Sequence record: NC_013585.1
Length of the DNA stretch: 24,186 nucleotides
Strand: one strand, 5' to 3'
A program made the position numbers and the translations under genes. The notes beneath the pieces were generated by a model. That model was given only the letters and a program-made list of their open reading frames with translations. It ran no database searches and was not told the DNA's origin. Below, piece after piece: positions 255 to 24,186 of the stretch (within the stretch, counting starts at the first letter, position 1; every line of letters begins with the position of its first letter).

Positions 255-397
255 AGGAAAGAGATAACGTAATAAAGAAGAAGATACGGATAAAGGAAAA
301 CCTAATAAAGCGTTTGCAACATGATATTGAAGTTAACCGTAAAATCATCATACGGGAAAAAAGGGAAATCGAAAAGTTGAGAAAAAAGTTAAGGTAG
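251..397 (+). CDS. 48-aa highly basic coiled-coil-like protein (not in ORF track)
   Basis: Hand-translated MKERDNVIKKKIRIKENLIKRLQHDIEVNRKIIIREKREIEKLRKKLR. ATGA overlap with the vp2 stop; fills the gap up to the next promoter. Confidence 0.65.
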   Translation: MKERDNVIKKKIRIKENLIKRLQHDIEVNRKIIIREKREIEKLRKKLR

Positions 398-400
398 GCC

Positions 401-431
401 ATTTATAAAACCATAATCTTTTTTTCTCTTG
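401..431 (+). promoter_or_regulatory. TATA box (TTTATAAA 402-409) plus pyrimidine tract: leaderless promoter and probable terminator of the vp operon
   Basis: TATA begins 30 nt before ATG432; T-rich run TCTTTTTTTCTCTT is typical of Sulfolobales terminators. Confidence 0.7.
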
Positions 432-2482: not shown

Positions 2483-3164
2483 CGTATTATGGTTATCTAA
2501 AAAAATAGTTTCGGCATATCATAACATAGGCTTTGTATCGGCGGTAGTTTTCGGTAAGCAGGGTTCAGGGAAAACTACTTATGCCCTTAAAGTTGCTAGG
2601 GATGTATTTTGGAAACTAAACAATTTAGAAAATAAGGATGACGCATGGGATTACGTTAGAAATGCTTACTTCTTTGAATTACCTAATGCACTTGACAAAA
2701 TCCAAGACGCAATAGACAATGATTATAGGATTCCCTTAATCATATTTGATGATGCGGGTATTTGGATGAGTAAGTATGTATGGTATGAGGACTACATGAA
2801 AGTATTCTATAAGATCTATGCCCTCATAAGGACTAGGGTGTCAGCGGTTATATTTACAACCCCATCACCTGAAGACATCGCTTTTTATCTGAGGGAAAAA
2901 GGATGGTATCAGATACGGGTAACAATGGTGAATAGAAATAAGATGATAGCCAGAGCCACACTTTACGCTAAAGATTTCGGTAGAAACACAAGTGGTGAGA
3001 TCGTTACCCAGGTGAAGACAAAGGCCTTAGACTTTTTTAAGGTACAAATACCTGATAATATATATAAGGAATATATGCAAAGGAGGAAGGAAACGGAAAG
3101 AAAATTATTAGAAGAATTGAGAAAAACGCTATCAACCTTAAACGAAAAAAAGGCCGTTAATTAG
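2466..3164 (+). CDS. SSV1 B251-like P-loop ATPase (DnaA-like / putative packaging or replication ATPase)
   Basis: Walker A GKQGSGKT, Walker B LIIFDDAG; conserved position convergent with the integrase. Confidence 0.9.
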   Translation: MTSKSDVLWLSKKIVSAYHNIGFVSAVVFGKQGSGKTTYALKVARDVFWKLNNLENKDDAWDYVRNAYFFELPNALDKIQDAIDNDYRIPLIIFDDAGIWMSKYVWYEDYMKVFYKIYALIRTRVSAVIFTTPSPEDIAFYLREKGWYQIRVTMVNRNKMIARATLYAKDFGRNTSGEIVTQVKTKALDFFKVQIPDNIYKEYMQRRKETERKLLEELRKTLSTLNEKKAVN

Positions 3165-3179
3165 GGTAGATAACGGGGG

Positions 3180-4223
<1,044 letters not shown>

Positions 4224-4254
4224 AAGGAGTTTAAAAGCATTGGCAACCCGTTAG

Positions 4255-4298
4255 TTTTTGCCGTTAAAAAGCGTGAAATTGAAAGATGACGGCAAAAA
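4255..4298. repeat. Inverted repeat (10 bp perfect, 12 with a G-T pair) in the int / early-promoter intergenic region
   Basis: TTTTTGCCGT (4255-4264) is the reverse complement of ACGGCAAAAA (4289-4298). Confidence 0.75.
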
Positions 4299-4303
4299 AT
4301 ATG

Positions 4304-4373
4304 TAGTACAAAGTAAGTATACAGTAATGCTTAAATACTACAAAGTACAAAGATTATACTGAGAAAGATGGAA
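4304..4373 (+). promoter_or_regulatory. Early promoter copy A (70-bp direct repeat) with TACAAAG heptamers
   Basis: 66/70 identical to 10057-10126; CTTAAATA TATA-like box; TACAAAG at 4307, 4339 and 4346. Confidence 0.85.
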
Positions 4374-4544
4374 ACACACATCACCGTAAAAATGGATAAA
4401 AAGCTAAAGGATGTTTTTTCAGACCTATGCGAAATGGAAGGAGTGGATCTAAGCCACGGCATAAGAGAATTAATCGCTGAAGCTGTAGCTAGAGGCTACA
4501 TCGTGAAAGAAAGAAGAGAAAGAATGGAAAAGGTGAAGGCGTAA
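4368..4544 (+). CDS. 58-aa ribbon-helix-helix (CopG-like) regulator (not in ORF track)
   Basis: Hand-translated METHITVKMDKKLKDVFSDLCEMEGVDLSHGIRELIAEAVARGYIVKERRERMEKVKA: alternating beta-strand followed by two helices; first gene after the promoter. Confidence 0.8.
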   Translation: METHITVKMDKKLKDVFSDLCEMEGVDLSHGIRELIAEAVARGYIVKERRERMEKVKA

Positions 4545-4562
4545 AGCTGTGGGTGGTAACGC

Positions 4563-5078
4563 ATGAAAGCAATGAAATATAATTTCCAAGAAGTAGACGA
4601 AAGAAAACCAACACTAATAGTAAAATTGGCTCCAACGTCGGAAGATGGTAGTTACGGCGAAGCAGTATTGGAATTCAATAAACTATTGGAACCGGTAAAG
4701 GTGTCAGGCAAAACAAAGGACGGGAAAAACTTTGAGACGACTAGATGCGAAATGGTGGCGATACCGTTAGAAGGCGTATTCATCGATGTAATAAACAAAG
4801 AAGAAGTACCTAAGAAGGATCCCAAGACGGGCAGGGTTATAGGAAAAGACATGATACCTAAATCCTACACTGCCGACGAACTAAGCAAACTAATGGAAGA
4901 AAGAGGAAACGATGGAGTGATCATAAGGCTAAGTCAGGGTAGTTATGAATTTATAAGGAAGAACGTTAATGCGGGGAAGATACAATCCGGTGACATAATA
5001 AAAATAGAGTACACCATAGGGAATAGCGGAGGTGCTACAATAAAGAAGATATTTAAAGCAGAACGTGAAGAACAATAA
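4563..5078 (+). CDS. Hypothetical beta-rich protein, possible OB-fold ssDNA-binding protein
   Basis: 171 aa; GGTGGT RBS; beta-strand pattern ending GDIIKIEY; acidic tail EREEQ; sits upstream of two helicase-like genes. Function is inferred only. Confidence 0.65.
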   Translation: MKAMKYNFQEVDERKPTLIVKLAPTSEDGSYGEAVLEFNKLLEPVKVSGKTKDGKNFETTRCEMVAIPLEGVFIDVINKEEVPKKDPKTGRVIGKDMIPKSYTADELSKLMEERGNDGVIIRLSQGSYEFIRKNVNAGKIQSGDIIKIEYTIGNSGGATIKKIFKAEREEQ

Positions 5079-5100
5079 TTTTTTTTCGAGGAGATTTCTC

Positions 5101-5307
5101 ATGACTGTGATTTTATTACATAAAAAGGGGAAATACTCAACCACAACTAATTGCGAACCTGCACATGAAGTTTTGTTGGAAAACGGTCAAAGGATAAAAG
5201 CGGAAAAGGTTTGTTGGGAAGAAAATGGGAAAGTTACTGTTTTCGGAAATAAGGTTTACGTAATAAAGTTCGGCATTGCAACGGTGGTGGAGGAATATGA
5301 TGCTTAG
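5101..5307 (+). CDS. Hypothetical 68-aa protein
   Basis: GAGGAG RBS before ATG5101 (the track start at 5065 overlaps the upstream gene); overlaps the helicase start. Confidence 0.6.
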   Translation: MTVILLHKKGKYSTTTNCEPAHEVLLENGQRIKAEKVCWEENGKVTVFGNKVYVIKFGIATVVEEYDA

Positions 5308-6955
5308 AGATTATCAGGAGGAGATTGTAAAGAGAGCAGTTGAAGCATTGGATAACGGCCGTTCCGTTATCATAAACGCCCCAACCGGCACTGGAAAAAC
5401 TCTAATGGCTCTTGAGACTTTGAGGAGACTGGATAAGATAGGTTGGGTTTACGTTAGGACGATTTCAGAATACAGTTCGTGGGAAAGAGATGCAAGAAAA
5501 TTAGGTTTAACATTTAGCGGTTTAATGAGAAAAGGAGAATTTTGCAAAGCAATAAAGAGGCCTTATTATTACTATTGTACGAAATGTGATGAAGAAGTTG
5601 GTGAAGAGCACCTAAGGATACATAAAAGGTTTATAGAAAGGAGGTATAACAACCCTTTATGCTTTTCTTCTAAAACAGGATTATGTAGGTTTAGAGTTGA
5701 GAACCATGATGAGATTAAAGACACTGTAATAATGAAAATGGAAGAACTGTTAAGGAATGAGGGAATAAAAGGTACTGCTAACTGGTTTAGGGATAATAAA
5801 ATAGAAGGTGAAGATGTATGCGTTTATAAAACAATAGAAGGAGGTACGGACATCAGAATATACTCCTATATCTACTTCTTCTTAGGAATTAGGAAACCTG
5901 ATGAAGACATAGTAGTGTTTGATGAAGCCCATAACCTTGATGATTTTAATATCAATAACGTCACTATAACATTAAAGGAGATAATAAATCATTTCAAAAG
6001 GTTAAGAATTGAAGGTTTAAACGACGGCACATTTTTAGAGACCGTCGGGAATGATTTTAAGGAATTTATCCAAGATCCGGAAAGGGGATTTCCACATACA
6101 GAGTTCTTAGATGAAGATCTACAAAAAAAGTTTGGGACTGTAGCAAGGGCATGGGAAGAACAAGATAGATGGTATATAGAACGTGACTATAATGAGTGGT
6201 ACATTAAGGTAATGCCTGCAGACCCTGCAATATGGCTAAGTATTTTGAACGATTACCGCTTTATTCTCCTTTCTGGAACTATGCCGTCTCCTGAATACGT
6301 AAAAACCGTTTGGGGTCTTAATGATTTCGTTTATATTAATGCTTTATCGCTCTGGAGCAAAACGTCACTAAAAGGACATTTTGAGGGTGCTAAAATATTT
6401 GTGGATGACACTGTTTACTACATAAAGAATGAAAGGGCTAAATACAGAAAGCAAATAGCAGCCACCGTAAGACAATATGCGTCTAAAGAAGGAATAAATT
6501 TAGTAATAGTACCTAATTATGAGGAACTGGAAGCCTACAAGAATCTATTTTTCGGTGCTTTCTTTGAGGATATCAGACCGGACGTATTGGATCGCGTGAA
6601 GACTCTTCCTGATGGTTCTATAGTTTTTGCTGTAGCAGGAGGCAAGTTAAGTGAAGGTGTAGAGGTTACTGAAAACGGTAAAAGTAAAATAAAAACAGTA
6701 TTCGTAATAGGTCTACCTCTTCCCGAGTATAATAACCCCTACCTAGATAAAATGATTGAAACAGTTTCAAAAAGAGTATCAAAAGATCCTAACAACTTTA
6801 AGTGGCAAGTGCTTTACGAGAAAGCAGTCATTAAGATTAAACAGGCAATAGGTAGAGCCATTAGGGGCCCTCAAGATTCTGCAAACATCTACTTGATTGA
6901 CAAAAGGTTCGGGTACAAGAACGTAATGAGGTTAATGAATCTGGAGGTGGCCTAA
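5297..6955 (+). CDS. XPD/Rad3/DinG-family SF2 helicase with Fe-S-type cysteines
   Basis: Q-motif LRDYQ, APTGTGKT, DEAHNL, LLSGT, GGKLSEGVE, QAIGRAIR; GGTGGAGG RBS before ATG5297/5300. Confidence 0.9.
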   Translation: MMLRDYQEEIVKRAVEALDNGRSVIINAPTGTGKTLMALETLRRLDKIGWVYVRTISEYSSWERDARKLGLTFSGLMRKGEFCKAIKRPYYYYCTKCDEEVGEEHLRIHKRFIERRYNNPLCFSSKTGLCRFRVENHDEIKDTVIMKMEELLRNEGIKGTANWFRDNKIEGEDVCVYKTIEGGTDIRIYSYIYFFLGIRKPDEDIVVFDEAHNLDDFNINNVTITLKEIINHFKRLRIEGLNDGTFLETVGNDFKEFIQDPERGFPHTEFLDEDLQKKFGTVARAWEEQDRWYIERDYNEWYIKVMPADPAIWLSILNDYRFILLSGTMPSPEYVKTVWGLNDFVYINALSLWSKTSLKGHFEGAKIFVDDTVYYIKNERAKYRKQIAATVRQYASKEGINLVIVPNYEELEAYKNLFFGAFFEDIRPDVLDRVKTLPDGSIVFAVAGGKLSEGVEVTENGKSKIKTVFVIGLPLPEYNNPYLDKMIETVSKRVSKDPNNFKWQVLYEKAVIKIKQAIGRAIRGPQDSANIYLIDKRFGYKNVMRLMNLEVA

Positions 6956-8980
6956 ATGGATAAGGAAACACTTAAGAGGATAGTTGCTGAAAAACTGAAG
7001 AAGGATGGAGATGGGAAAAATAATTCAGTGCCACCTCAAAACTCAAATAACTTATTACGTAATGATAAAAATTCTCCGGAAGTAAACAAAGGGTATAACC
7101 AAAATGTACCATTTGCACCAGTGAATTTAAGCACTGGTGCAAGAGAAAAATTGACTGGTGCAAATGGTACAAATCACTCTATATCTTCCAAAACTTCCGG
7201 AGAATTTAGTTCATCAGATGAGGAAGAAATTGAAGAAGGTGTTGAAATTAAAGATAATATAATTATAATAAAAACGAAAGATAAACATAAATTCGAAATA
7301 TACTACGGTTTCGCTGGAACAATAGAGGACAATACTAGAATTATAGACCTTAAAGTTCCTCAACTTCCGCAATGGAATTTTGTAGCTAAGAAGAAGGATG
7401 AAACTTTAAGCATACTGATTACTATTGACTTTTATCAAGCCGAAGGAAAGACAATATACCATATTAGGAATAAGAAAGAGATAATTGGGAAACTTTACGC
7501 GTTCAGAGGTCAAAGAAATATCTCCAAGAAACTAATCAACGATGCTCTTGATTTATGGTTAGAACGCATAGAACCAGAGAAATATATACAATGGACAGAC
7601 GTACGTGAGGTGGTGAAAAAGTATGAAGAGTGGGAAGAGATAAATCAAGACCCGCTTAACTTTTTCCTAAGTAGGGCTTCGGAGGTTATAGGGAATGAGA
7701 AACTTAAGGCTGCGGTTTTGCTTAGTATAGTATCATCACAACTTAGGAAGCTCTTCGGGATATATCGTGTTCACTTAATTTTAACTGGTAGTTCCGGTGC
7801 CGGGAAGTCATCTACCATAAAATCAATCTTAAAGATGTTCTACGAGATGAGTGATGGGATCCAAGATTGGATAGTACTTAACATAACAAGGATGACAAAG
7901 GAAAGTTTAGGTTATCTTGACGTTGGTAGTCTTGACGATAAAGTGTTATTCATTGAACAACTTGACAATATAGAAGGAGTAGGATATCTAAGGGAAGCTA
8001 TGAGTGAAGGAAGAATAACTACGTTAATCCCGGTGAAGACGGAAACCGGGGATATAAAGACAGAACAAAAGATTATTCCGGGGCAGCCGGCATTTATTAC
8101 AACAAACGTTACTGCAAACGTTGACCACCAAATTCTAAATAGGTCGATACAGCTTTACTTAAGCCCGGCAGAAGATGAGAAGCTAAAAACGAAGATTATA
8201 GAGACGATCTTAGAGAGAGAACCGGAGGAGGAACTTCAAAAACTCAAATTAATTACCTATGTTTGGCTTAAGACAAGGCCTATTTCCCCAAAGATGACCA
8301 AAGAAGTGAAAGATGAATTGATAAGACTGCTTAGCAAGTTCATTAACTTTAAGAACATTTACAGGGCTACAGAAATCACTAGGAATTTAGTTAGAGCAGC
8401 AGCTTCACTTTTCGGCCATGAAGAGATTCAGAAAGACGACGTTAATTTCGTAATGAGTTACTTCAAGAAGGATATAATCCTCACCACATTAGAGCTCTCA
8501 GAGAGAGACCTTAATCTGTTGAAGTGGCTTAGAGACCACGGATTTATTCAAGGGGAGAAAGATGACGAAACTATTGATGTTGGTACCGCAGAAATAGCTC
8601 AATACTTTAAAATGGCAACTCAAGAGGTTAAGAAAATTTTGGATTCGCTTTATGATAAAGGTTTATTGTGGAAAGCATATGATGGTAAGCGTTTCAGTTG
8701 GGCGTTGTCACACTACGGGCTTAAAGTGTTGGATGAACTGGAGAAAGAGGTAGGAGAGAAAGAGGAGGAAATACAGGCAGATATCGAAGTTGATGATATG
8801 TTGTTGAATTATGTCCGTTCTAAGCTGTTAGGAAAAGATGAAGTTACGGAAGAGGAGCTTCAAAACATTTTGGAAAAAACAGTTCAGGCTACTGATACGC
8901 AATCACAACAAATGTGGATAGATCTGTTAGAGAAAATGAGCGTGATAAAGAAGAGTGATGGGAAATGGAAAGTGCTTTGA
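6956..8980 (+). CDS. MCM-like AAA+ ATPase / Rep-type helicase with disordered N-terminus and C-terminal winged helices
   Basis: GNEKLKAAVLLS, Walker A GSSGAGKS, Walker B-like LFIEQLD, REAMSEG, FITTN sensor 1, ILNRS arginine finger, wHTH TAEIAQYF...KKILDSLYDKGLL; GGAGGTGG RBS and TAAATG coupling. Confidence 0.75.
   Translation: MDKETLKRIVAEKLKKDGDGKNNSVPPQNSNNLLRNDKNSPEVNKGYNQNVPFAPVNLSTGAREKLTGANGTNHSISSKTSGEFSSSDEEEIEEGVEIKDNIIIIKTKDKHKFEIYYGFAGTIEDNTRIIDLKVPQLPQWNFVAKKKDETLSILITIDFYQAEGKTIYHIRNKKEIIGKLYAFRGQRNISKKLINDALDLWLERIEPEKYIQWTDVREVVKKYEEWEEINQDPLNFFLSRASEVIGNEKLKAAVLLSIVSSQLRKLFGIYRVHLILTGSSGAGKSSTIKSILKMFYEMSDGIQDWIVLNITRMTKESLGYLDVGSLDDKVLFIEQLDNIEGVGYLREAMSEGRITTLIPVKTETGDIKTEQKIIPGQPAFITTNVTANVDHQILNRSIQLYLSPAEDEKLKTKIIETILEREPEEELQKLKLITYVWLKTRPISPKMTKEVKDELIRLLSKFINFKNIYRATEITRNLVRAAASLFGHEEIQKDDVNFVMSYFKKDIILTTLELSERDLNLLKWLRDHGFIQGEKDDETIDVGTAEIAQYFKMATQEVKKILDSLYDKGLLWKAYDGKRFSWALSHYGLKVLDELEKEVGEKEEEIQADIEVDDMLLNYVRSKLLGKDEVTEEELQNILEKTVQATDTQSQQMWIDLLEKMSVIKKSDGKWKVL
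7069..7207. repeat. Nested inverted repeats centred at 7138 inside the MCM-like gene
   Basis: 15-bp perfect IR 7069-7083/7193-7207; 18-bp perfect IR 7105-7122/7154-7171; 11-bp hairpin 7113-7123/7132-7142. Confidence 0.9.
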
Positions 8981-9324
8981 GTTTATTTACATCAATAGAG
9001 ACTCACGGTATCGTTGTAAGGAAGCATATAAATTGGGATTATGTAGGTATTGCCATTACGACTATAGGTACTATAGTCGTCTTCAAAGATACAGACTGGT
9101 CATATTACGGTGTTTATTCACCGTTTAAGGGTAGGTATCATATTCATATGCCTTTTACTGACATTGTAATATTTGATGATAAAAGTAAGGATGTGCTAAA
9201 CGAAGTATGGGGATGTCTTCATTTTGCAGAATGTTATATCGAAAAAGGGGTAGTGTATAGTATAAACAAGTTTAGAATGAGGAGTTTTATTCCGTTTGGA
9301 GTTCATACAACAACCAAACTTTAA
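8965..9324 (+). CDS. Hypothetical 119-aa protein
   Basis: Overlaps the end of the AAA+ gene; aromatic and beta-rich; no recognised family. Confidence 0.6.
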   Translation: MESALSLFTSIETHGIVVRKHINWDYVGIAITTIGTIVVFKDTDWSYYGVYSPFKGRYHIHMPFTDIVIFDDKSKDVLNEVWGCLHFAECYIEKGVVYSINKFRMRSFIPFGVHTTTKL

Positions 9325-9477
9325 TATTTTTATATCATAAGATAGGTACTACGTATTATGTTTTTTATAGTAATACCATGTCTAAAGATGAAAAATACAT
9401 AATCTTACTAACATTAGGGTAATACTACCATCTACATTAGTTATAGTTTAAAATAAAGAAGTGTATTAAAAAAATAG

Positions 9478-9786
9478 GTGGTTGCATTTAATTGGGTTAA
9501 AGAGAACCTAGTATTAGGTAGTATAGTGAGGTTAAAAAAACTTATTGAAGATGAGGATATAGAAATAGCAAAAAAGGAGGCTAGACGTTATAAACTGAAG
9601 CTCTGTGATTGGTCTAGAAATGAGTGGTGGTTTCATCAATGGCATAGTGTTTTCGAAATTGTAGAATTTGATTTACGGCGAGATCTTATAGATTCGGCGT
9701 ATGAGATGTTAGAGCAGGCTGAGTTTCAACTTTCAATAACTGAGCCAAGTTTTTCTAAGGTATCTGTTAAACAGAGTAAAGCCTGA
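9478..9786 (+). CDS. Hypothetical 102-aa protein
   Basis: Open frame after an AT-rich spacer; start uncertain; last 61 nt overlap the convergent wHTH gene. Confidence 0.5.
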   Translation: MVAFNWVKENLVLGSIVRLKKLIEDEDIEIAKKEARRYKLKLCDWSRNEWWFHQWHSVFEIVEFDLRRDLIDSAYEMLEQAEFQLSITEPSFSKVSVKQSKA

Positions 9787-10013
9787 GCTATTTGCTGACC
9801 TTTTTCTGTTAGATAAAGTCTTTTCTTTTTTATTCTGCCTTCTTGTTCTTCTTTTTCTTCTATAAAGCCATCATTAACTAATTCTTCTTTGGTTTTGTAA
9901 AATGTATTCGGAGCAAGAGTTGAGTATTTTAACGCTTCATTTACTGTGCATCCTTCGTGTAAGAAAATCGCTCTAATAACTAATGCGTGATTTGTAATGA
10001 AATTACTTTTCAT
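9726..10013 (-). CDS. MarR/PadR-like winged-helix protein, SSV1 F93-like
   Basis: NTFYKTKEELVNDGFIEE...KRLYLTEKGQQIA wHTH signature. Confidence 0.85.
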   Translation of the reverse strand: MKSNFITNHALVIRAIFLHEGCTVNEALKYSTLAPNTFYKTKEELVNDGFIEEKEEQEGRIKKKRLYLTEKGQQIAQALLCLTDTLEKLGSVIES

Positions 10014-10056
10014 AGTTTGTATTTTGTATGAGAACCTATTTAGGGATACGCGATAT

Positions 10057-10126
10057 TAGTACAAAGTTTGTACACAGTAATGCTTAAATACTACAAAGTA
10101 CAAACATTATACTGAGAAAGATGGAA
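10057..10126 (+). promoter_or_regulatory. Early (T6-like) promoter copy B (70-bp direct repeat)
   Basis: 66/70 identical to 4304-4373; contains the palindrome GTACAAA-G-TTTGTAC and tandem TACAAAG-TACAAAC after the TATA box. Confidence 0.85.
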
Positions 10127-10411
10127 GTTCCAGAAGAAAAGTTTAAAGAAAAAATAGTTAATCAAAATAGTATTTTTTTCGTTATAACAAATAGTAAAGA
10201 TTCAATGACAAACTATATACATTTAACTGTTGAAGAAAACGGTGAAAAAGTAATAAACGACAAGCGATTTATTGATGAGGGTATAGAGTTCGAAACAGTA
10301 ATACAGAAACTAGAGTTATTATATAAACTAAATGCTGATATGATATCTCAAGAAGAAATAAGGAAAGAACTATACGCAACGATAGCGAAGTTATTATCCT
10401 TTTTCATGTGA
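10121..10411 (+). CDS. SSV1 A100-like protein
   Basis: QNSIFFVIT...YIHL...[16 protein letters not shown] resembles A100; first gene of the T6-like operon. Confidence 0.8.
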
Positions 10412-10424
10412 TGGGTGGCGGAAA

Positions 10425-10604
10425 ATGAGAGTTATTACATTTAAAGCAGAAGAAGACCTATTAGAACTATTAGATAGATATGCAGCAAAACATGGGATAT
10501 ACAGAAGCGAAGCTATACGAAAAGCAATAGAAAAAATGGTAGAGGACGAAGTTAAAAAAGAAACTGTACCAACGGCAAAAATCGAAAAGGGGCAAAGGTT
10601 ATGA
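10425..10604 (+). CDS. 59-aa RHH/CopG protein, SSV1 C80-like (not in ORF track)
   Basis: Hand-translated [59 protein letters not shown]; GGGTGG RBS. Confidence 0.88.
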
Positions 10605-11591: not shown

Positions 11592-11965
11592 CGGAGTCAG
11601 GTACTAAAAAGTACCTGAGTAACCATAAGGGTATAATGATTCATGTATCATTGGAGGAATTAACGCGTTACCATTCTCTACGGCCGGAGCAGAAACGGTT
11701 AATACGGGCTTTCGTGAAAATGCTGATCTATTACCCCCAACTACTTGATGAAAGCTCCTATCTTTACAAATTGCTTACTGTAAAAGCTGTATCGCCTTAC
11801 GTCTGTCCCCTTTGCTTAACGCCGTTTCACTCTTTCGCCTCTCTCAAACAGCACATTCGTTACGCTGAGCATACAACGACATGCCCGGTGTGCAAAAAGC
11901 AGTTCCAAAAGACTGATACGTTATTAGACCATGTGTGTAAGAAGCACAATATTTGCGTGAGTTAA
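11588..11965 (+). CDS. B129-like C2H2 zinc-finger DNA-binding protein, copy 1
   Basis: KKYLSNHKGI...EQKRLIR...CPLC...HIRY.EH...CPVC...HVCKKHNICVS; GGAGGGTGA RBS before ATG11588. Confidence 0.92.
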   Translation: MTESGTKKYLSNHKGIMIHVSLEELTRYHSLRPEQKRLIRAFVKMLIYYPQLLDESSYLYKLLTVKAVSPYVCPLCLTPFHSFASLKQHIRYAEHTTTCPVCKKQFQKTDTLLDHVCKKHNICVS

Positions 11966-12001
11966 CCCTTTTTTAAAAACTCACTCTCTTTTTATTTAAT
12001 T

Positions 12002-12190
12002 ATGAGAAGGAAATGGGTCATTTTTTCGAGAGACTCTTACGGTGATATCGTTTATTTGAAAATAACAGAGAAGCAGTCTACTGCACGCAAATATTATGCT
12101 GAGTGTCAGCAATTTTTTGGGGAAATCTGCGTTATGGAATTAGGGGAGTTCTATACTCTTGATGAGGCTGAAGAATTAGACTCCTTTTAA
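12002..12190 (+). CDS. Hypothetical 62-aa protein
   Basis: Own TATA box (11971-11978) 31 nt upstream; leaderless ATG; acidic C-terminus. Confidence 0.7.
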   Translation: MRRKWVIFSRDSYGDIVYLKITEKQSTARKYYAECQQFFGEICVMELGEFYTLDEAEELDSF

Positions 12191-12213
12191 ACCCATTCTC
12201 TTTTTTATGCCTA

Positions 12214-13402: not shown

Positions 13403-13437
13403 TCCCTTTTAAAACCCTTTCCTCTTTCTTCATCTAA

Positions 13438-13527: not shown

Positions 13528-13897
13528 TATCAAAAAATATCAGGTCAGTCACGGTAAAGAGAATAAAGGGGTATTCTTCCACCTTAGCAGTGAAGAATAC
13601 GAAATTTACAAGAATCTACCTGAAGAACAGAAGAGGGCCTTAAGGCTTCTCATAAAAACGTTAATAAGGAACCCTAACCTACTTAACGATAACTTAGTTA
13701 AATATGCTATGTTAAAATCAATAAATACATTCACTTGTCCTATCTGTTTAATGCCTTTCTCTTCCTATAAGGGTTTAATTGAACATATTAGGTATACTAC
13801 TCATAACCTTAAGTGTCGTTATTGCGGTAAAACATTCACGAGTCAAGACGCGTTATTAGACCATATTTGTAAAAAACATAATATTTGTGTGAGTTAG
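13520..13897 (+). CDS. B129-like zinc-finger protein, copy 2
   Basis: EQKRALR...CPIC...HIRY.TH...CRYC...HICKKHNICVS; AGGAGGT RBS. Confidence 0.9.
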   Translation: MPDIKKYQVSHGKENKGVFFHLSSEEYEIYKNLPEEQKRALRLLIKTLIRNPNLLNDNLVKYAMLKSINTFTCPICLMPFSSYKGLIEHIRYTTHNLKCRYCGKTFTSQDALLDHICKKHNICVS

Positions 13898-13949
13898 TAG
13901 TTTTTCTGCCATTTAAAAAACTACGGAATTCGGTAAAAACAGAACTGAA

Positions 13950-15092: not shown

Positions 15093-15506
15093 ATGAAAAA
15101 GTTAAAAGTGTTCAGCATAGTTCTAACTGTTGTTTCAGCAATATTTTTAGGGTATTCTTTATATCTTCATCGGAATTACGCTAAAGTGAATGATAAAGCA
15201 ATAGCTATCGGCAACATGTATACTAAGTTGGATCCTACATATACGAAGTATTTTTCTTCCCCGCCCCCGTCCTCACCTTGGTACATTCAATATGCCCCGG
15301 ACTTAATTCTTCTAGCGGGGATTACAAGCGTCATTCTAGCTTTTTACCTATCCCCTGGGCTTAGAAACGGTTTCAAGACCTTGATCAACAAGTATCGTAA
15401 ACTAATAGATGATAAAAAAATTATGAAAATGATTAATGCAATGATTAATGTAATAAAGGAGTTTATATGGTTGTTAATAGACCATTTAAGTCCAATCTTG
15501 GAATAG
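15093..15506 (+). CDS. Two-TM membrane protein with YIQYAPD motif (paralog of 13082-13402)
   Basis: Signal anchor, SSPPPSSP linker, YIQYAPD followed by a TM helix; own TATA box at 15062. Confidence 0.75.
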   Translation: MKKLKVFSIVLTVVSAIFLGYSLYLHRNYAKVNDKAIAIGNMYTKLDPTYTKYFSSPPPSSPWYIQYAPDLILLAGITSVILAFYLSPGLRNGFKTLINKYRKLIDDKKIMKMINAMINVIKEFIWLLIDHLSPILE

Positions 15507-15541
15507 GCTCTTTATAAAATCATTCTCTTTTTTGCCCTTTA

Positions 15542-17993: not shown

Positions 17994-18284
17994 ATGTCTT
18001 TAATTCAAAAAGCGTGGTTTAGGGCTTTAAGTTATGTAGGGATTTTCTTCTTATCATGGTTTCTAGATATAGGTTTAGGTATTGCTCTTTACGAAAAGAT
18101 ATTCTATTCTGGATTTAACACAATGCTTTACGTAGATTTCAGTGCTTCCGTCTACGCTTTATTGTTCTCTCTTTATTTCCTGAAGAAGAAACACTTCTTT
18201 TCTCTCATAGTCCCAATACTAAACTTCTTTATAGGTCTGGTCTTTCTAGCTTTTGAGTTATTAGTTTTAATAGGAGTAAGTTAG
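17994..18284 (+). CDS. 96-aa three-TM membrane protein
   Basis: Three hydrophobic segments with KKKH loop; follows the 806-aa gene. Confidence 0.72.
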   Translation: MSLIQKAWFRALSYVGIFFLSWFLDIGLGIALYEKIFYSGFNTMLYVDFSASVYALLFSLYFLKKKHFFSLIVPILNFFIGLVFLAFELLVLIGVS

Positions 18285-18318
18285 GCCCTTTTTAAATTCA
18301 CTTTCTTTTCTTTCTTCA

Positions 18319-23489: not shown

Positions 23490-23912
23490 ATGAAGGTAAA
23501 AGCCAGTATGGCGGATATAATCGTAACTCTATCAGCTTTAAAAGTATTTAAAAACCCAACAAAATATTTCACAAGTGAGCAGATTGAGGAAGGAGTAAAG
23601 ATATTCTGGCAAACTTGGGATGGTAACATCATTAGGTCAGCACAAAAGTTTATAGAAGTTGCTAAAGCCAATCCAAAGTTAACAAAGGGTGAAGGTAGCG
23701 TAAATGTTGGCATGCTGATAGCACTCTTCATATTCATCTTGATCGGCATAGTATTATTGCCTGTAATCACTAGTGAAGTGTCTGGACTCACCTCGGGAAC
23801 TGATGCAAGTGTGACAGGCACAAATGCCACATTGCTTAACCTAGTACCATTGTTCTACATCTTGGTAATCATAATAGTGCCTGCGGTAGTAGTATACAAA
23901 ATGATGAAGTGA
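23490..23912 (+). CDS. vp1: Major capsid protein VP1 precursor (N-terminal propeptide, two TM helices)
   Basis: KIFWQTWDGNII...NPKLTKGE|G processing region; hydrophobic hairpin LFIFILIGIVLLP...TLLNLVPLFYIL. Confidence 0.95.
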   Translation: MKVKASMADIIVTLSALKVFKNPTKYFTSEQIEEGVKIFWQTWDGNIIRSAQKFIEVAKANPKLTKGEGSVNVGMLIALFIFILIGIVLLPVITSEVSGLTSGTDASVTGTNATLLNLVPLFYILVIIIVPAVVVYKMMK

Positions 23913-23913
23913 T

Positions 23914-24186
23914 ATGGAGTTTGATGCTGACGCTAAAACAATCATAGGCCTTTTCATCTTCATATTGATAGGTATAGTGTTCTTCTCACCTATCATAACA
24001 TACGTTAATCAAGTATCATCACCCGGTAGCTATACTACAGTAGGGACAACTAGTAGTTTCGTAGCAAATCCCTATTATGCAGGGTCAGCAGGTGCTACTA
24101 TAGCGTCATTAGTACCGATCTTCTACCTGTTAGTAATCATAGCAGTTCCCGCTTTTGTCGTATACAGAATGACCAGAGAGAGGTGA
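23914..24186 (+). CDS. vp3: Minor capsid protein VP3 (VP1 paralog)
   Basis: IGLFIFILIGIVFFSPI...GATIASLVPIFYLLVII; follows vp1. Confidence 0.93.
   Translation: MEFDADAKTIIGLFIFILIGIVFFSPIITYVNQVSSPGSYTTVGTTSSFVANPYYAGSAGATIASLVPIFYLLVIIAVPAFVVYRMTRER

What the first reader, a model, noticed from the sequence alone, without database searches (positions are those of the whole stretch)
4304..10126. A 5.75-kb plasmid-like replication module bracketed by a duplicated 70-bp promoter: possible excisable sub-replicon
Seen: 4304-4373 and 10057-10126 are direct repeats (66/70 identical). Between them lie an RHH regulator, a possible SSB, an XPD-type helicase, an MCM-like ATPase with an internal repeat structure, two orphans and an F93-like gene. 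This replaces the leftward T5-like block typical of SSVs. Recombination between the repeats would release a 5,753-bp circle with promoter, CopG-like regulator, Rep-like helicase and candidate origin, which is the layout of a Sulfolobales plasmid. It would leave an 18,433-bp genome, closer to usual fusellovirus size. Inference: a virus-plasmid chimera or a built-in satellite, perhaps giving two replication modes.
Basis: partly seen in the sequence, partly recalled or inferred. Interest (0 to 1): 0.8.

Follow-up and report, generated by a model that had tools for sequence, protein, structure and literature searches.

The report
Paired early promoters bracketing replication cassette
The two 70-bp repeats in this archaeal spindle-virus genome (ASV1) are most likely twin copies of the virus's early promoter that switch on a plasmid-related DNA-replication gene cassette and the next operon together; this layout is already published for this virus group, and I found no sign that the cassette pops out as its own mini-plasmid.

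Summary
The window is the complete published genome of Acidianus spindle-shaped virus 1 (FJ870917). The repeat is real: 4304-4373 and 10057-10126 match at 66/70, 5,753 bp apart.

Each copy has a TATA box flanked by TACAAAG motifs and ends in the ATG of the first gene of a rightward operon (A58a, C96). The literature already calls the block "T5+" and mentions repeats at both ends.

- Seven relatives carry their own 48-82-nt repeat pair at the same two positions.
- Both copies in a genome are always the same sequence type. That type co-varies with the ribbon-helix-helix (RHH) protein encoded first in the block.
- This points to a shared promoter-operator, as for SSV1 F55 on T5/T6.

"Plasmid-like replication module" is partly right:
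- C674 folds like an MCM helicase.
- It is 38% identical to the large ORF of satellite plasmid pSSVi and of a 4.7-kb integrated Metallosphaera element.
- Its 5' end holds a conserved nested palindrome with lineage-specific iterons, a candidate origin.

"Excisable sub-replicon" has no support. No classifiable locus among 42 metagenomic loci showed a circle or precise-deletion junction. Published and natural deletions do not recombine the two promoter copies. The pSSVi-like integrase lies outside the bracket.

Verdict: a known architecture, with one possibly new cis element.

The parts
4304..4373 (+). Left copy of the 70-nt repeat: candidate T5+ early promoter-operator. TATA-like TTAAATA at 4330-4336, TACAAAG motifs at 4307, 4339 and 4346, ATG of A58a at 4368.
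   Evidence: Same architecture (repeats flanking a TATA box) as published SSV T6 promoters.
10057..10126 (+). Right copy of the repeat: candidate T6 early promoter-operator, ending in the ATG GAA of C96 (10121).
4368..4544 (+). A58a, ribbon-helix-helix protein and first gene of the block. Candidate regulator of both repeat copies.
   Evidence: Pfam RHH_1 23 bits against a cut-off of 20.5. The RHH type co-varies with the promoter type across 12 genomes or contigs.
4563..5078 (+). A171, conserved beta-rich protein of unknown function. The SSB role is not confirmed.
   Evidence: phrog_21681; 43 homologs, all next to the helicase; AF2 pLDDT 89; no significant PDB fold match.
5065..5307 (+). B80, small conserved ORF of unknown function.
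   Evidence: phrog_31784 only; similar to SSV7_C74 in the record's annotation.
5276..6955 (+). C559, XPD/Rad3-type SF2 helicase.
   Evidence: Pfam Helicase_C_2 5e-22, ResIII, DEAD_2; PDB 3crv XPD 2e-34.
6956..8980 (+). C674, MCM-fold AAA+ helicase/initiator candidate with C-terminal winged-helix domains. Homolog of the large ORF of pSSVi.
   Evidence: Walker A GSSGAGKSS is invariant. AF2 pLDDT 76. Foldseek top 50 PDB hits are all MCM, E 7e-12 to 4e-9. 38% identity to the pSSVi ORF 344-2551. Homologs carry PF27228 MTBMA_p00010_2nd.
7062..7214 (.). Nested palindrome inside the 5' part of the C674 gene. Outer arms AAAATTCTCCGGAAGT / ACTTCCGGAGAATTT. Inner arms 7105-7128 / 7148-7171 carry three ACTGGTGCA iterons. 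Candidate replication origin.
   Evidence: Three iterons against 0.07 expected. The outer arms are conserved and the inner iterons are lineage-specific in relatives. pSSVi and the M. sedula element have analogous palindromes. The region encodes a disordered segment, aa 16-93.
8965..9324 (+). B119, conserved small protein that follows the MCM-like gene in all relatives.
   Evidence: phrog_24251; synteny in L009, L010, L011, L014 and L057.
9478..9786 (+). B102, small ORF with no family match.
   Evidence: Homologs sit next to D95-like genes in L014, L024, L026 and L042.
9726..10013 (-). D95, F93-like winged-helix regulator, divergent from the right repeat.
   Evidence: Pfam F-93_WHD 5e-19.
3180..4223 (-). 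Integrase D347, just outside the bracket and divergent from the left repeat. Closest to pSSVi-type plasmid integrases.
   Evidence: 56% identity to the pSSVi integrase and 57-66% to the M. sedula element integrase. Only 35-39% to metagenomic integrase fragments that are 55-67% identical to the SSV7/SSV9 integrases.
10121..10604 (+). C96 (DUF5517) and A59 (second RHH), the first genes of the T6 operon driven by the right repeat.

Best explanation
The two 70-nt repeats are paralogous copies of one early promoter-operator.

Shown:
- Each copy has a TATA box flanked by TACAAAG-type motifs and ends in the start codon of the first gene of a rightward operon. One operon is T5+ (A58a to B102). The other is T6 (C96, A59 and onward).
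- Each copy sits in a divergent intergenic region, next to the integrase on the left and D95 on the right.

Inferred:
- A virus-encoded ribbon-helix-helix protein, most likely A58a, binds the repeated motifs in both copies. The replication cassette and the T6 operon would then be repressed and released together. SSV1 F55 does this at the T5, T6 and Tind promoters.
- The 5.75 kb between the copies is an accessory replication cassette: RHH regulator, A171, B80, XPD helicase, MCM-fold helicase/initiator C674 and B119.
- The cassette's candidate origin is the nested palindrome at 7062-7214, inside the 5' end of the C674 gene.

The cassette is evolutionarily related to pSSVi-type integrative plasmids and is exchanged among fuselloviruses and other elements. 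In ASV1 it is a fixed part of the genome. The similarity of the two copies is kept by the shared regulator and occasional gene conversion. It is not a sign of an excision cycle.
For: - The repeat ends in the ATG of A58a and of C96. Four of the five TACAAAGT copies in the genome lie in the two repeats.
- The same layout of repeats flanking a TATA box is published for SSV T6 promoters. The T5+ transcript with repeats at both ends is published for ASV1, SSV7 and SSV9 (PMC6080066).
- Repeat pairs at the same two positions: SSV7 66 nt, 94%, 5,795 apart; SSV14 63 nt, 83%, 5,772; SSV9 56 nt, 84%, 5,459; S. ohwakuensis provirus 82 nt, 84%, 6,132; L010 52 nt, 100%, 5,638; L042 4,434 apart; L011 48 nt, 75%, 5,165.
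- Both copies in a genome always belong to the same sequence type. That type co-varies with the RHH type: 63-90% identity within a type, 29-45% across types. The S. ohwakuensis provirus has ASV1-like A171 (79%) but the other RHH type and the other promoter type at both ends.
- SSV1 precedent: RHH protein F55 binds 11-nt sites in the T5, T6, Tind and Tlys promoters (PMC9608457).
- Cassette function: XPD, MCM fold, homology to the pSSVi and M. sedula elements, conserved palindrome.
Against: - No transcript mapping or DNA-binding data exist for ASV1, so promoter and operator status is inferred from sequence and analogy.
- The left promoter and the RHH gene are adjacent, so their co-variation alone could be simple linkage. 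Only the distant T6 copy makes it informative, and that rests on about 8 genomes.
- A59 or D95 could be the true regulator instead of A58a.
- An SSV9 variant lacking the whole block is viable (PMC6452263). If the palindrome is an origin, it is not the only one.
- Direct repeats of 70 nt can in principle recombine in Sulfolobales, so rare circles are not excluded.
Confidence: 0.72

Rival explanations
1. The repeats act as recombination sites that regularly release a self-replicating 5.75-kb plasmid-like circle (a built-in satellite) and an 18.4-kb virus, giving two replication modes.
For: - The circle would formally carry a promoter, an RHH, an MCM-like Rep and the palindrome. This is the parts list of pSSVi minus the integrase.
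- pSSVi is a real 5,740-bp satellite packaged by fuselloviruses (PMC3543421; PMC8371274).
- The block is dispensable in SSV9.
- The block occurs in either orientation between the same flanks in L011 and L027, so its borders have been recombination-active over evolutionary time.
Against: - The bracket is conserved in at least 8 diverged genomes rather than being lost.
- In the loci that could be classified, no promoter copy joins D95/B119-type sequence upstream to an A58a-type gene downstream (circle junction). None joins an integrase directly to T6 genes (precise deletion).
- The one contig that looked circular (L010, 5,692 bp) has ends that differ in the 2 nt before the 52-nt repeat and stops exactly at the repeat. 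This is what an assembly break at a repeat looks like.
- Observed deletions do not recombine the two promoter copies.
- There is no recombinase inside the bracket, and the pSSVi-like integrase lies outside it.
Confidence: 0.07
2. Historical scar. The repeats arose when a circular pSSVi-like plasmid, carrying the same promoter type, integrated into an ancestral fusellovirus by homologous (Campbell-type) recombination at the T6 promoter. They have since been kept as promoters. This explains their origin and is compatible with the best explanation of their present function.
For: - Campbell-type integration of a circle at a shared sequence yields exactly a direct-repeat bracket.
- C674 and the adjacent integrase both have their closest non-viral relatives in pSSVi-type elements.
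- Cassette subtypes and orientations differ between otherwise collinear elements.
Against: - The pSSVi-like integrase lies outside the bracket.
- pSSVi itself shows no such promoter repeat.
- In SSV9 and L042 the orthologous copies are more alike than the paralogous ones. Any such event is therefore old and cannot be reconstructed.
Confidence: 0.3
3. The repeat pair has no regulatory role. It is a neutral duplication homogenised by gene conversion.
For: In ASV1 and SSV7 the paralogs are 91-93% identical, closer than any ortholog. This needs some homogenisation.
Against: - Each copy sits exactly upstream of an operon's first ATG and has a TATA box.
- The pairing persists across genomes with two unrelated sequence types and tracks the RHH type.
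Confidence: 0.05

Closest known systems
T5+ / T6 early promoters of fuselloviruses ASV1, SSV7 and SSV9 (Redder et al. 2009; Goodman & Stedman 2018, PMC6080066)
   Same: It is the same object. [quoted passage not shown]
   Different: The papers I could read do not quantify the pairs. They also do not report the RHH/promoter-type co-variation, the MCM fold of C674 or the palindrome in its gene. I could not read Redder et al. 2009.
SSV1 F55 repressor with its operators in the T5, T6, Tind and Tlys promoters
   Same: A small RHH protein with repeated short sites flanking the TATA boxes of the two early promoters, so that both are controlled together.
   Different: - F55 and its 11-nt site ATAGATAGAGT are reported as unique to SSV1.
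- The ASV1 motifs are TACAAAG-type.
- The ASV1 promoters are in direct rather than divergent orientation and lie 5.75 kb apart.
- Binding has not been tested for ASV1.
pSSVi, the 5,740-bp integrative satellite plasmid of Saccharolobus solfataricus (NC_013777), and the 4.66-kb integrated element of Metallosphaera sedula (Msed_2283 region)
   Same: - They share an MCM-like large ORF with ASV1: 38% identity over about 370 aa for pSSVi and about 630 aa for M. sedula.
- They have a large palindrome in the 5' part of that gene.
- They encode a small RHH protein.
- Their SSV-type integrase is 56-66% identical to that of ASV1.
   Different: - They have no XPD helicase, A171 or B119.
- Their integrase is part of the element, whereas in ASV1 it lies outside the repeat bracket.
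- They are bounded by att sites in a tRNA gene, not by promoter copies.
- The RHH proteins show no detectable similarity to A58a.
Phage lambda ori inside gene O (iterons within the initiator's own coding sequence)
   Same: Iteron-like repeats lie inside the initiator-type gene, in a segment that encodes a disordered linker. The comparison with lambda rests on my own knowledge.
   Different: There is no homology. Origin activity of the ASV1 element is untested, and an SSV9 variant lacking the block is viable.

Membership tests
Fusellovirus early (T5/T6-type) promoter-operator | TATA box flanked on both sides by short repeated motifs, immediately upstream of the first ORF of an early operon | tested here: met
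   TTAAATA at 4330 and 10083. TACAAAG at 4307, 4339, 4346 and at 10060, 10092, 10099. ATG at 4368 and 10121. Matches the published T6 layout.
Fusellovirus early (T5/T6-type) promoter-operator | Conserved at the same genomic positions in related viruses | tested here: met
   Repeat pairs occur in SSV7, SSV9, SSV14, L010, L042, L057 and L011.
Fusellovirus early (T5/T6-type) promoter-operator | Mapped transcription start and binding by a viral RHH repressor | not testable with these tools
   Only indirect evidence: co-variation of RHH type and promoter type.
pSSVi-type integrative plasmid replicon | MCM-like large ORF of the PF27228 family | tested here: met
   C674 aa 221-591 is 38% identical to the pSSVi ORF, E 2e-64. 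Homologs carry PF27228.
pSSVi-type integrative plasmid replicon | SSV-type integrase inside the element, with att-site borders | tested here: not met
   The integrase at 3180-4223 lies outside the bracket. The borders are promoter copies, not tRNA-derived att repeats like the 47-nt repeats of the M. sedula element.
pSSVi-type integrative plasmid replicon | Exists as a free or independently integrated circle | tested here: inconclusive
   No circle junction in the classifiable metagenomic loci. PLSDB holds only pSSVi itself. The look-alike contig L010 is best read as an assembly break. No read-level data for ASV1.
MCM helicase family (for C674) | Overall fold: N-terminal beta domain, AAA+ core and winged helix, matching solved MCMs | tested here: met
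   Foldseek top 50 PDB hits are all MCM, E 7e-12 to 4e-9, 460-627 aligned columns. TM scores are only 0.3-0.45.
MCM helicase family (for C674) | Sequence membership (Pfam MCM gathering score) | tested here: not met
   PF00493 scores 17.8 bits against a cut-off of 23.3, and only aa 239-294 align. No PDB sequence hit to MCM. I therefore call it MCM-like, not an MCM.
XPD/Rad3 SF2 helicase (for C559) | Helicase_C_2 and DEAD_2 domains, with similarity to solved XPD structures | tested here: met
   (3crv, 2e-34). A cysteine-rich insert (CKAIKRPYYYYCTKC...C...C) is visible in the sequence. An Fe-S cluster was not tested.
SSB / OB-fold protein (for A171) | OB-fold match to known single-strand-binding proteins | tested here: inconclusive
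   Confident model (pLDDT 89). The best SSB-like hits (Rim1, PriB, gene V) have E 0.2-0.5 and target-normalised TM <= 0.43. No sequence hit.
Excisable satellite (PICI / pSSVx-like) | Own excision function, plus evidence of free and deleted forms | tested here: not met
   No recombinase in 4304-10126. Natural and laboratory deletions have other breakpoints.

The most novel reading that the evidence does not exclude
The nested palindrome at 7062-7214 is the replication origin used by the MCM-like protein encoded around it. It has conserved outer arms AAATTCTCCGGAAGT and inner iterons that differ between lineages: ACTGGTGCA, GTTACGG, GTGTCG, TGCATCAC, and GTGGCA in the M. sedula element. This initiator-with-internal-origin unit would be shared by T5+ fuselloviruses, pSSVi-type plasmids and other Sulfolobales elements. 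ASV1 would then carry two replication systems, this cassette plus whatever lets block-less SSVs replicate. The natural 11.6-kb SSVs keep, and duplicate, only the palindrome with SSV14-type iterons. They would use a co-resident helper's MCM-like protein in trans.
Probability: 0.4. Interest if true: 0.55.

Novelty: already known. Interest (0 to 1): 0.3.

Why it matters
No fusellovirus origin had been functionally mapped as of 2018 (PMC6080066), and the role of the T5+ genes is unknown. The paired promoters and their matching RHH give a directly testable regulatory circuit.

The palindrome inside the MCM-like gene gives a concrete candidate origin. It links a virus, a satellite plasmid (pSSVi) and integrated elements through one replication module.

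That is useful for understanding how archaeal viruses and plasmids exchange replication machinery, and for building Sulfolobales vectors. The specific idea of a built-in excisable satellite would have been striking, but the evidence does not support it.

Tried and rejected
- **5.4-5.9-kb metagenomic contigs as possible free circles.** L008 is a different element. L009, L020, L043 and L050 start inside the left promoter and read through the right one. L010 has identical 52-nt ends, but the preceding 2 nt differ and the contig stops at the repeat edge. I read all of these as assembly breaks at the repeat.
- **L024 as a block-less variant.** Between the integrase fragment and B102/D95 it holds an inverted VP1-like piece and scrambled repeats. 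It is rearranged or chimeric, so I did not use it.
- **Collection scans that found nothing.** The IMG/VR pattern scan for the ASV1-type promoter gave 0 hits. The GTDB genome scan with the C674 alignment confirmed no relatives, so I obtained integrated copies through exact-protein look-ups instead.
- **A171 as an SSB.** No significant sequence or fold support.
- **Microhomology at the published SSV9 deletion ends.** Only a 7-nt match near the junction, about 30 nt away from one end, which is not convincing.
- **Redder et al. 2009.** It could not be read.
- **Loci without classification.** Fourteen of the 42 promoter-bearing loci had no hits to ASV1, SSV7 or SSV9 proteins, or only a distal A59-like hit, so their upstream side could not be classified.

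Full report
[quoted passage not shown] The deposited annotation is.

**The observation.** The direct repeat is exactly as described: 4304-4373 against 10057-10126, 66/70 identical, 5,753 bp apart.
- It is the longest direct repeat in the genome. Its 31-nt exact core compares with a mean of 14.5 and a maximum of 18 in 50 Markov-1 simulated genomes.
- Each copy contains a TATA-like TTAAATA flanked by TACAAAG motifs. Four of the five TACAAAGT octamers in the genome lie in the two copies.
- Each copy ends in ATG GAA, the first two codons of A58a (4368) and of C96 (10121).
- Each copy lies in a divergent intergenic region. The integrase starts leftward at 4223 and D95 starts leftward at 10013.

**Gene content of the block**

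| Gene | Finding |
|---|---|
| A58a | RHH_1 protein, above the Pfam cut-off |
| A171 | Conserved; confident beta-rich model (pLDDT 89); no significant fold or sequence match. The SSB idea is unproven. |
| C559 | XPD/Rad3 helicase (Helicase_C_2 5e-22; S. acidocaldarius XPD structure 2e-34) |
| C674 | Invariant Walker A; sub-threshold Pfam MCM hit; AlphaFold model pLDDT 76; top 50 PDB matches all MCM (E 7e-12 to 4e-9) |
| D95 | F93-type winged helix on the minus strand |
| B80, B119, B102 | No family outside fusellovirus-type elements |

The C674 model has an N-terminal beta domain, an AAA+ core and C-terminal winged helices. It is MCM-like by fold but not a sequence member of the MCM family.

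**What is already published.** Goodman and Stedman 2018 (PMC6080066) describe this block as a plus-strand 'T5+' transcript. It is present in ASV1, SSV7 and SSV9 in place of the usual leftward T5 operon. [quoted passage not shown] 2009. They also print T6 promoters with direct repeats on both sides of the TATA box. I could not obtain Redder et al. 2009. The core of the finding is therefore known.

**The repeat pair is a conserved architecture.** Every relative with the block has its own pair at the same two positions.

| Genome or contig | Repeat length | Identity | Spacing |
|---|---|---|---|
| ASV1 | 70 nt | 94% | 5,753 |
| SSV7 | 66 nt | 94% | 5,795 |
| SSV14 | 63 nt | 83% | 5,772 |
| SSV9 | 56 nt | 84% | 5,459 |
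| Sulfurisphaera ohwakuensis provirus (L057) | 82 nt | 84% | 6,132 |
| L010 | 52 nt | 100% | 5,638 |
| L042 | (pattern matches) | – | 4,434 |
| L011 | 48 nt | 75% | 5,165 |

The sequences fall into two unrelated types. The TACAAAG type occurs in ASV1, SSV9 and L042. The ATGTAC...GTACATA type occurs in SSV7, SSV14, L057 and L010. Both copies in a genome are always of the same type.
- In ASV1 and SSV7 the two paralogs are each other's closest match (93% and 91%), which needs some homogenisation.
- In SSV9 and L042 the orthologous copies are closer than the paralogous ones, so the duplication is old.

**Co-variation with the first gene.** The RHH protein encoded directly after the left copy also falls into two types. 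Identity is 63-90% within a type and 29-45% across types. The RHH type matches the promoter type in all 12 cases examined.

The informative case is the S. ohwakuensis provirus. Its A171 is the closest known relative of ASV1's (79%). Yet its RHH is of the other type, and so are the promoter copies at both ends, including the distant T6 copy.

I read this as a shared operator for that RHH. In SSV1 the RHH protein F55 binds 11-nt sites in the T5, T6, Tind and Tlys promoters and represses the early genes (PMC9608457). Binding in ASV1 is an inference, and A59 or D95 remain alternative regulators.

**Plasmid relationship.**
- In PLSDB the only relevant hit of C674 is pSSVi, at 38% identity over about 370 residues. 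pSSVi is a 5,740-bp integrative plasmid that fuselloviruses package and whose replication SSV2 infection stimulates (PMC3543421; PMC8371274).
- A 4.66-kb element integrated in Metallosphaera sedula is bounded by 47-nt tRNA-type att repeats. It encodes only a small RHH, a 124-aa ORF, a C674 homolog (39% over about 630 aa) and a split SSV-type integrase. A protein that is the one large ORF of such minimal elements is most likely their replication protein.
- The ASV1 integrase is 56% identical to the pSSVi integrase and 57-66% to that of the M. sedula element. It is only 35-39% identical to metagenomic integrase fragments that are themselves 55-67% identical to the SSV7/SSV9 integrases. The pSSVi-like part of ASV1 therefore runs from 3180 to 8980 and is not delimited by the repeats.

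**A candidate origin.** Inside the 5' part of the C674 gene lies a nested palindrome at 7062-7214.
- The outer arms are AAAATTCTCCGGAAGT / ACTTCCGGAGAATTT.
- The inner arms, 7105-7128 / 7148-7171, are 96% complementary and carry three ACTGGTGCA copies in both orientations, against 0.07 expected per genome.
- The outer arms are conserved in SSV14, L010, L011, L014 and L007, while the inner iterons differ by lineage: GTTACGG in SSV7, GTGTCG in SSV14, L007, L010 and L011, and TGCATCAC in L014. Metagenomic relatives with ASV1-type iterons add one to four extra iterons per side at 33-nt spacing.
- pSSVi and the M. sedula element have analogous palindromes at the same place in their homologous genes.
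- The region encodes a disordered segment of the protein, aa 16-93.

I did not find this element described in the papers I could search.

**Tests of the excision model.** One metagenome scan with the ASV1/SSV9-type promoter pattern returned 42 loci. I oriented them and annotated them with ASV1, SSV7 and SSV9 proteins.
- Promoter copies are followed either by an A58a-type RHH or by T6 genes.
- Where the upstream side could be classified, T5+-type copies have an integrase upstream (L017, L042) or upstream sequence with no hit to any query protein.
- T6-type copies have D95/B102-, B119- or A460-type genes upstream.
- No locus shows the circle junction and none shows the precise deletion junction. 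Fourteen loci could not be classified.
- Contigs of about 5.6-5.9 kb that looked like circles begin or end at the repeat. L010 has identical 52-nt ends, but the 2 nt before them differ (gt against ta) and the contig stops at the repeat edge. That fits an assembly break in an A-R-B-R-C genome.

**Known deletions.** Pauly et al. 2019 (PMC6452263) report an SSV9 variant that lost bases 2823-9693 and still produces clearing zones. The deletion removes part of the integrase, the whole block, both promoter copies (3867-3922 and 9326-9381) and C96. The block is therefore dispensable there, and the breakpoints are not the repeats.

The natural 11.3-11.9-kb SSVs integrated in S. islandicus differ from SSV14 by two deletions, SSV14 coordinates 343-2874 and 3329-7684. 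These remove both promoter copies. Between them survive the last ~55 codons of the helicase gene and the palindrome, which is then tandemly duplicated. The first breakpoint abuts the left edge of the left promoter copy (344-406), but neither deletion recombines one promoter copy with the other.

**Mobility of the cassette.** The 31.6-kb contig behind L011, and L027, share collinear flanks but carry different subtypes of the helicase/MCM-like block in opposite orientations. In L027 the block's promoter is divergent from, and an inverted copy of, the T6 promoter. The block behaves as an exchangeable cassette whose borders coincide with the promoters. That fits the published recombination idea on evolutionary time scales, but it does not amount to an excision cycle.

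**Conclusion.** The repeats are most likely the paired early promoter-operators of the T5+ and T6 operons (confidence about 0.7). The block is an accessory, plasmid-related replication cassette with its own candidate origin. A regular excision cycle yielding a built-in satellite is unsupported (about 0.07).

pSSVi shows that the MCM-like gene with its palindrome can belong to an autonomous replicon. The viable SSV9 deletion shows that the rest of a fusellovirus genome replicates without it. ASV1 may therefore carry two replication systems on one molecule.

Noticed in passing
window 7062-7214; also L003 6642-6708, L004 3144-3297, L010 2686-2827, L011 10234-10462, L014 2123-2276, L002 482-600, L060 7266-7353: A nested palindrome sits inside the 5' end of every C674-type gene. 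The outer arms are conserved and the inner iterons differ by lineage. It is a candidate replication origin, and I did not find it described in the papers I searched.
   Followed up: yes
L007 (MK054217) 1-1335 compared with L004 (SSV14): The natural 11.6-kb SSVs have lost both early promoters, most of the helicase gene, the MCM-like core and the first T6 genes. They keep the palindrome region and duplicate it in tandem (228-nt unit, 589-1044). Its iterons are identical to those of SSV14 from the same volcano. They may depend on a helper for replication.
   Followed up: partly
window 3180-4223 (-): The ASV1 integrase is much closer to the integrases of plasmid pSSVi (56%) and of the M. sedula integrated element (57-66%) than to integrase fragments of the SSV7/SSV9 type (35-39%).
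   Followed up: partly
window 11919-11973 and 13851-13905: A second bracketing direct repeat (55 nt, 82%, 1,932 bp apart) covers the 3' ends of the paralogous zinc-finger genes C137 and C125. It encloses C62, B276 and C106, which the record annotates as similar to S. tokodaii ST1724/ST1725. It looks like a duplication-bounded insertion.
   Followed up: no
L011 13456-14469; L008 4496-5503: Non-fusellovirus-like elements carrying the same helicase/MCM-like cassette also encode a full-length TFIIB (TFB) homolog (335-337 aa), next to RHH and ZapB-like genes. L008 additionally has a STIV_B116-like gene.
   Followed up: no
L011 7000-13000 compared with L027 (oriented) 6500-10600: The flanks are the same, but the helicase/MCM-like block is of a different subtype and in the opposite orientation. 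In L027 the T6-type promoter is tandemly duplicated and faces an inverted T5-type copy.
   Followed up: partly
L005 (SSV9) 8208-8570: A large complex palindrome (84-nt arms, 83% complementary, many nested repeats) lies in a non-coding stretch of the SSV9 T5+ region. SSV9's shorter MCM-like gene A460 lacks the 5' palindrome, so this may be the displaced equivalent.
   Followed up: no
window 395-430, 11963-11998, 12177-12212, 13405-13427, 15504-15539, 18282-18317: A family of TAGGCCCTTTATAAA-type sequences lies upstream of operons. It matches the published 'core' fusellovirus promoters with a GC-rich BRE, and it is clearly different from the repeat studied here.
   Followed up: no
window 23842-23904 and 24110-24172: A 63-nt repeat (76% identity) reflects the VP1/VP3 paralogy. 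The same repeat is seen in SSV7, SSV9 and SSV14.
   Followed up: no
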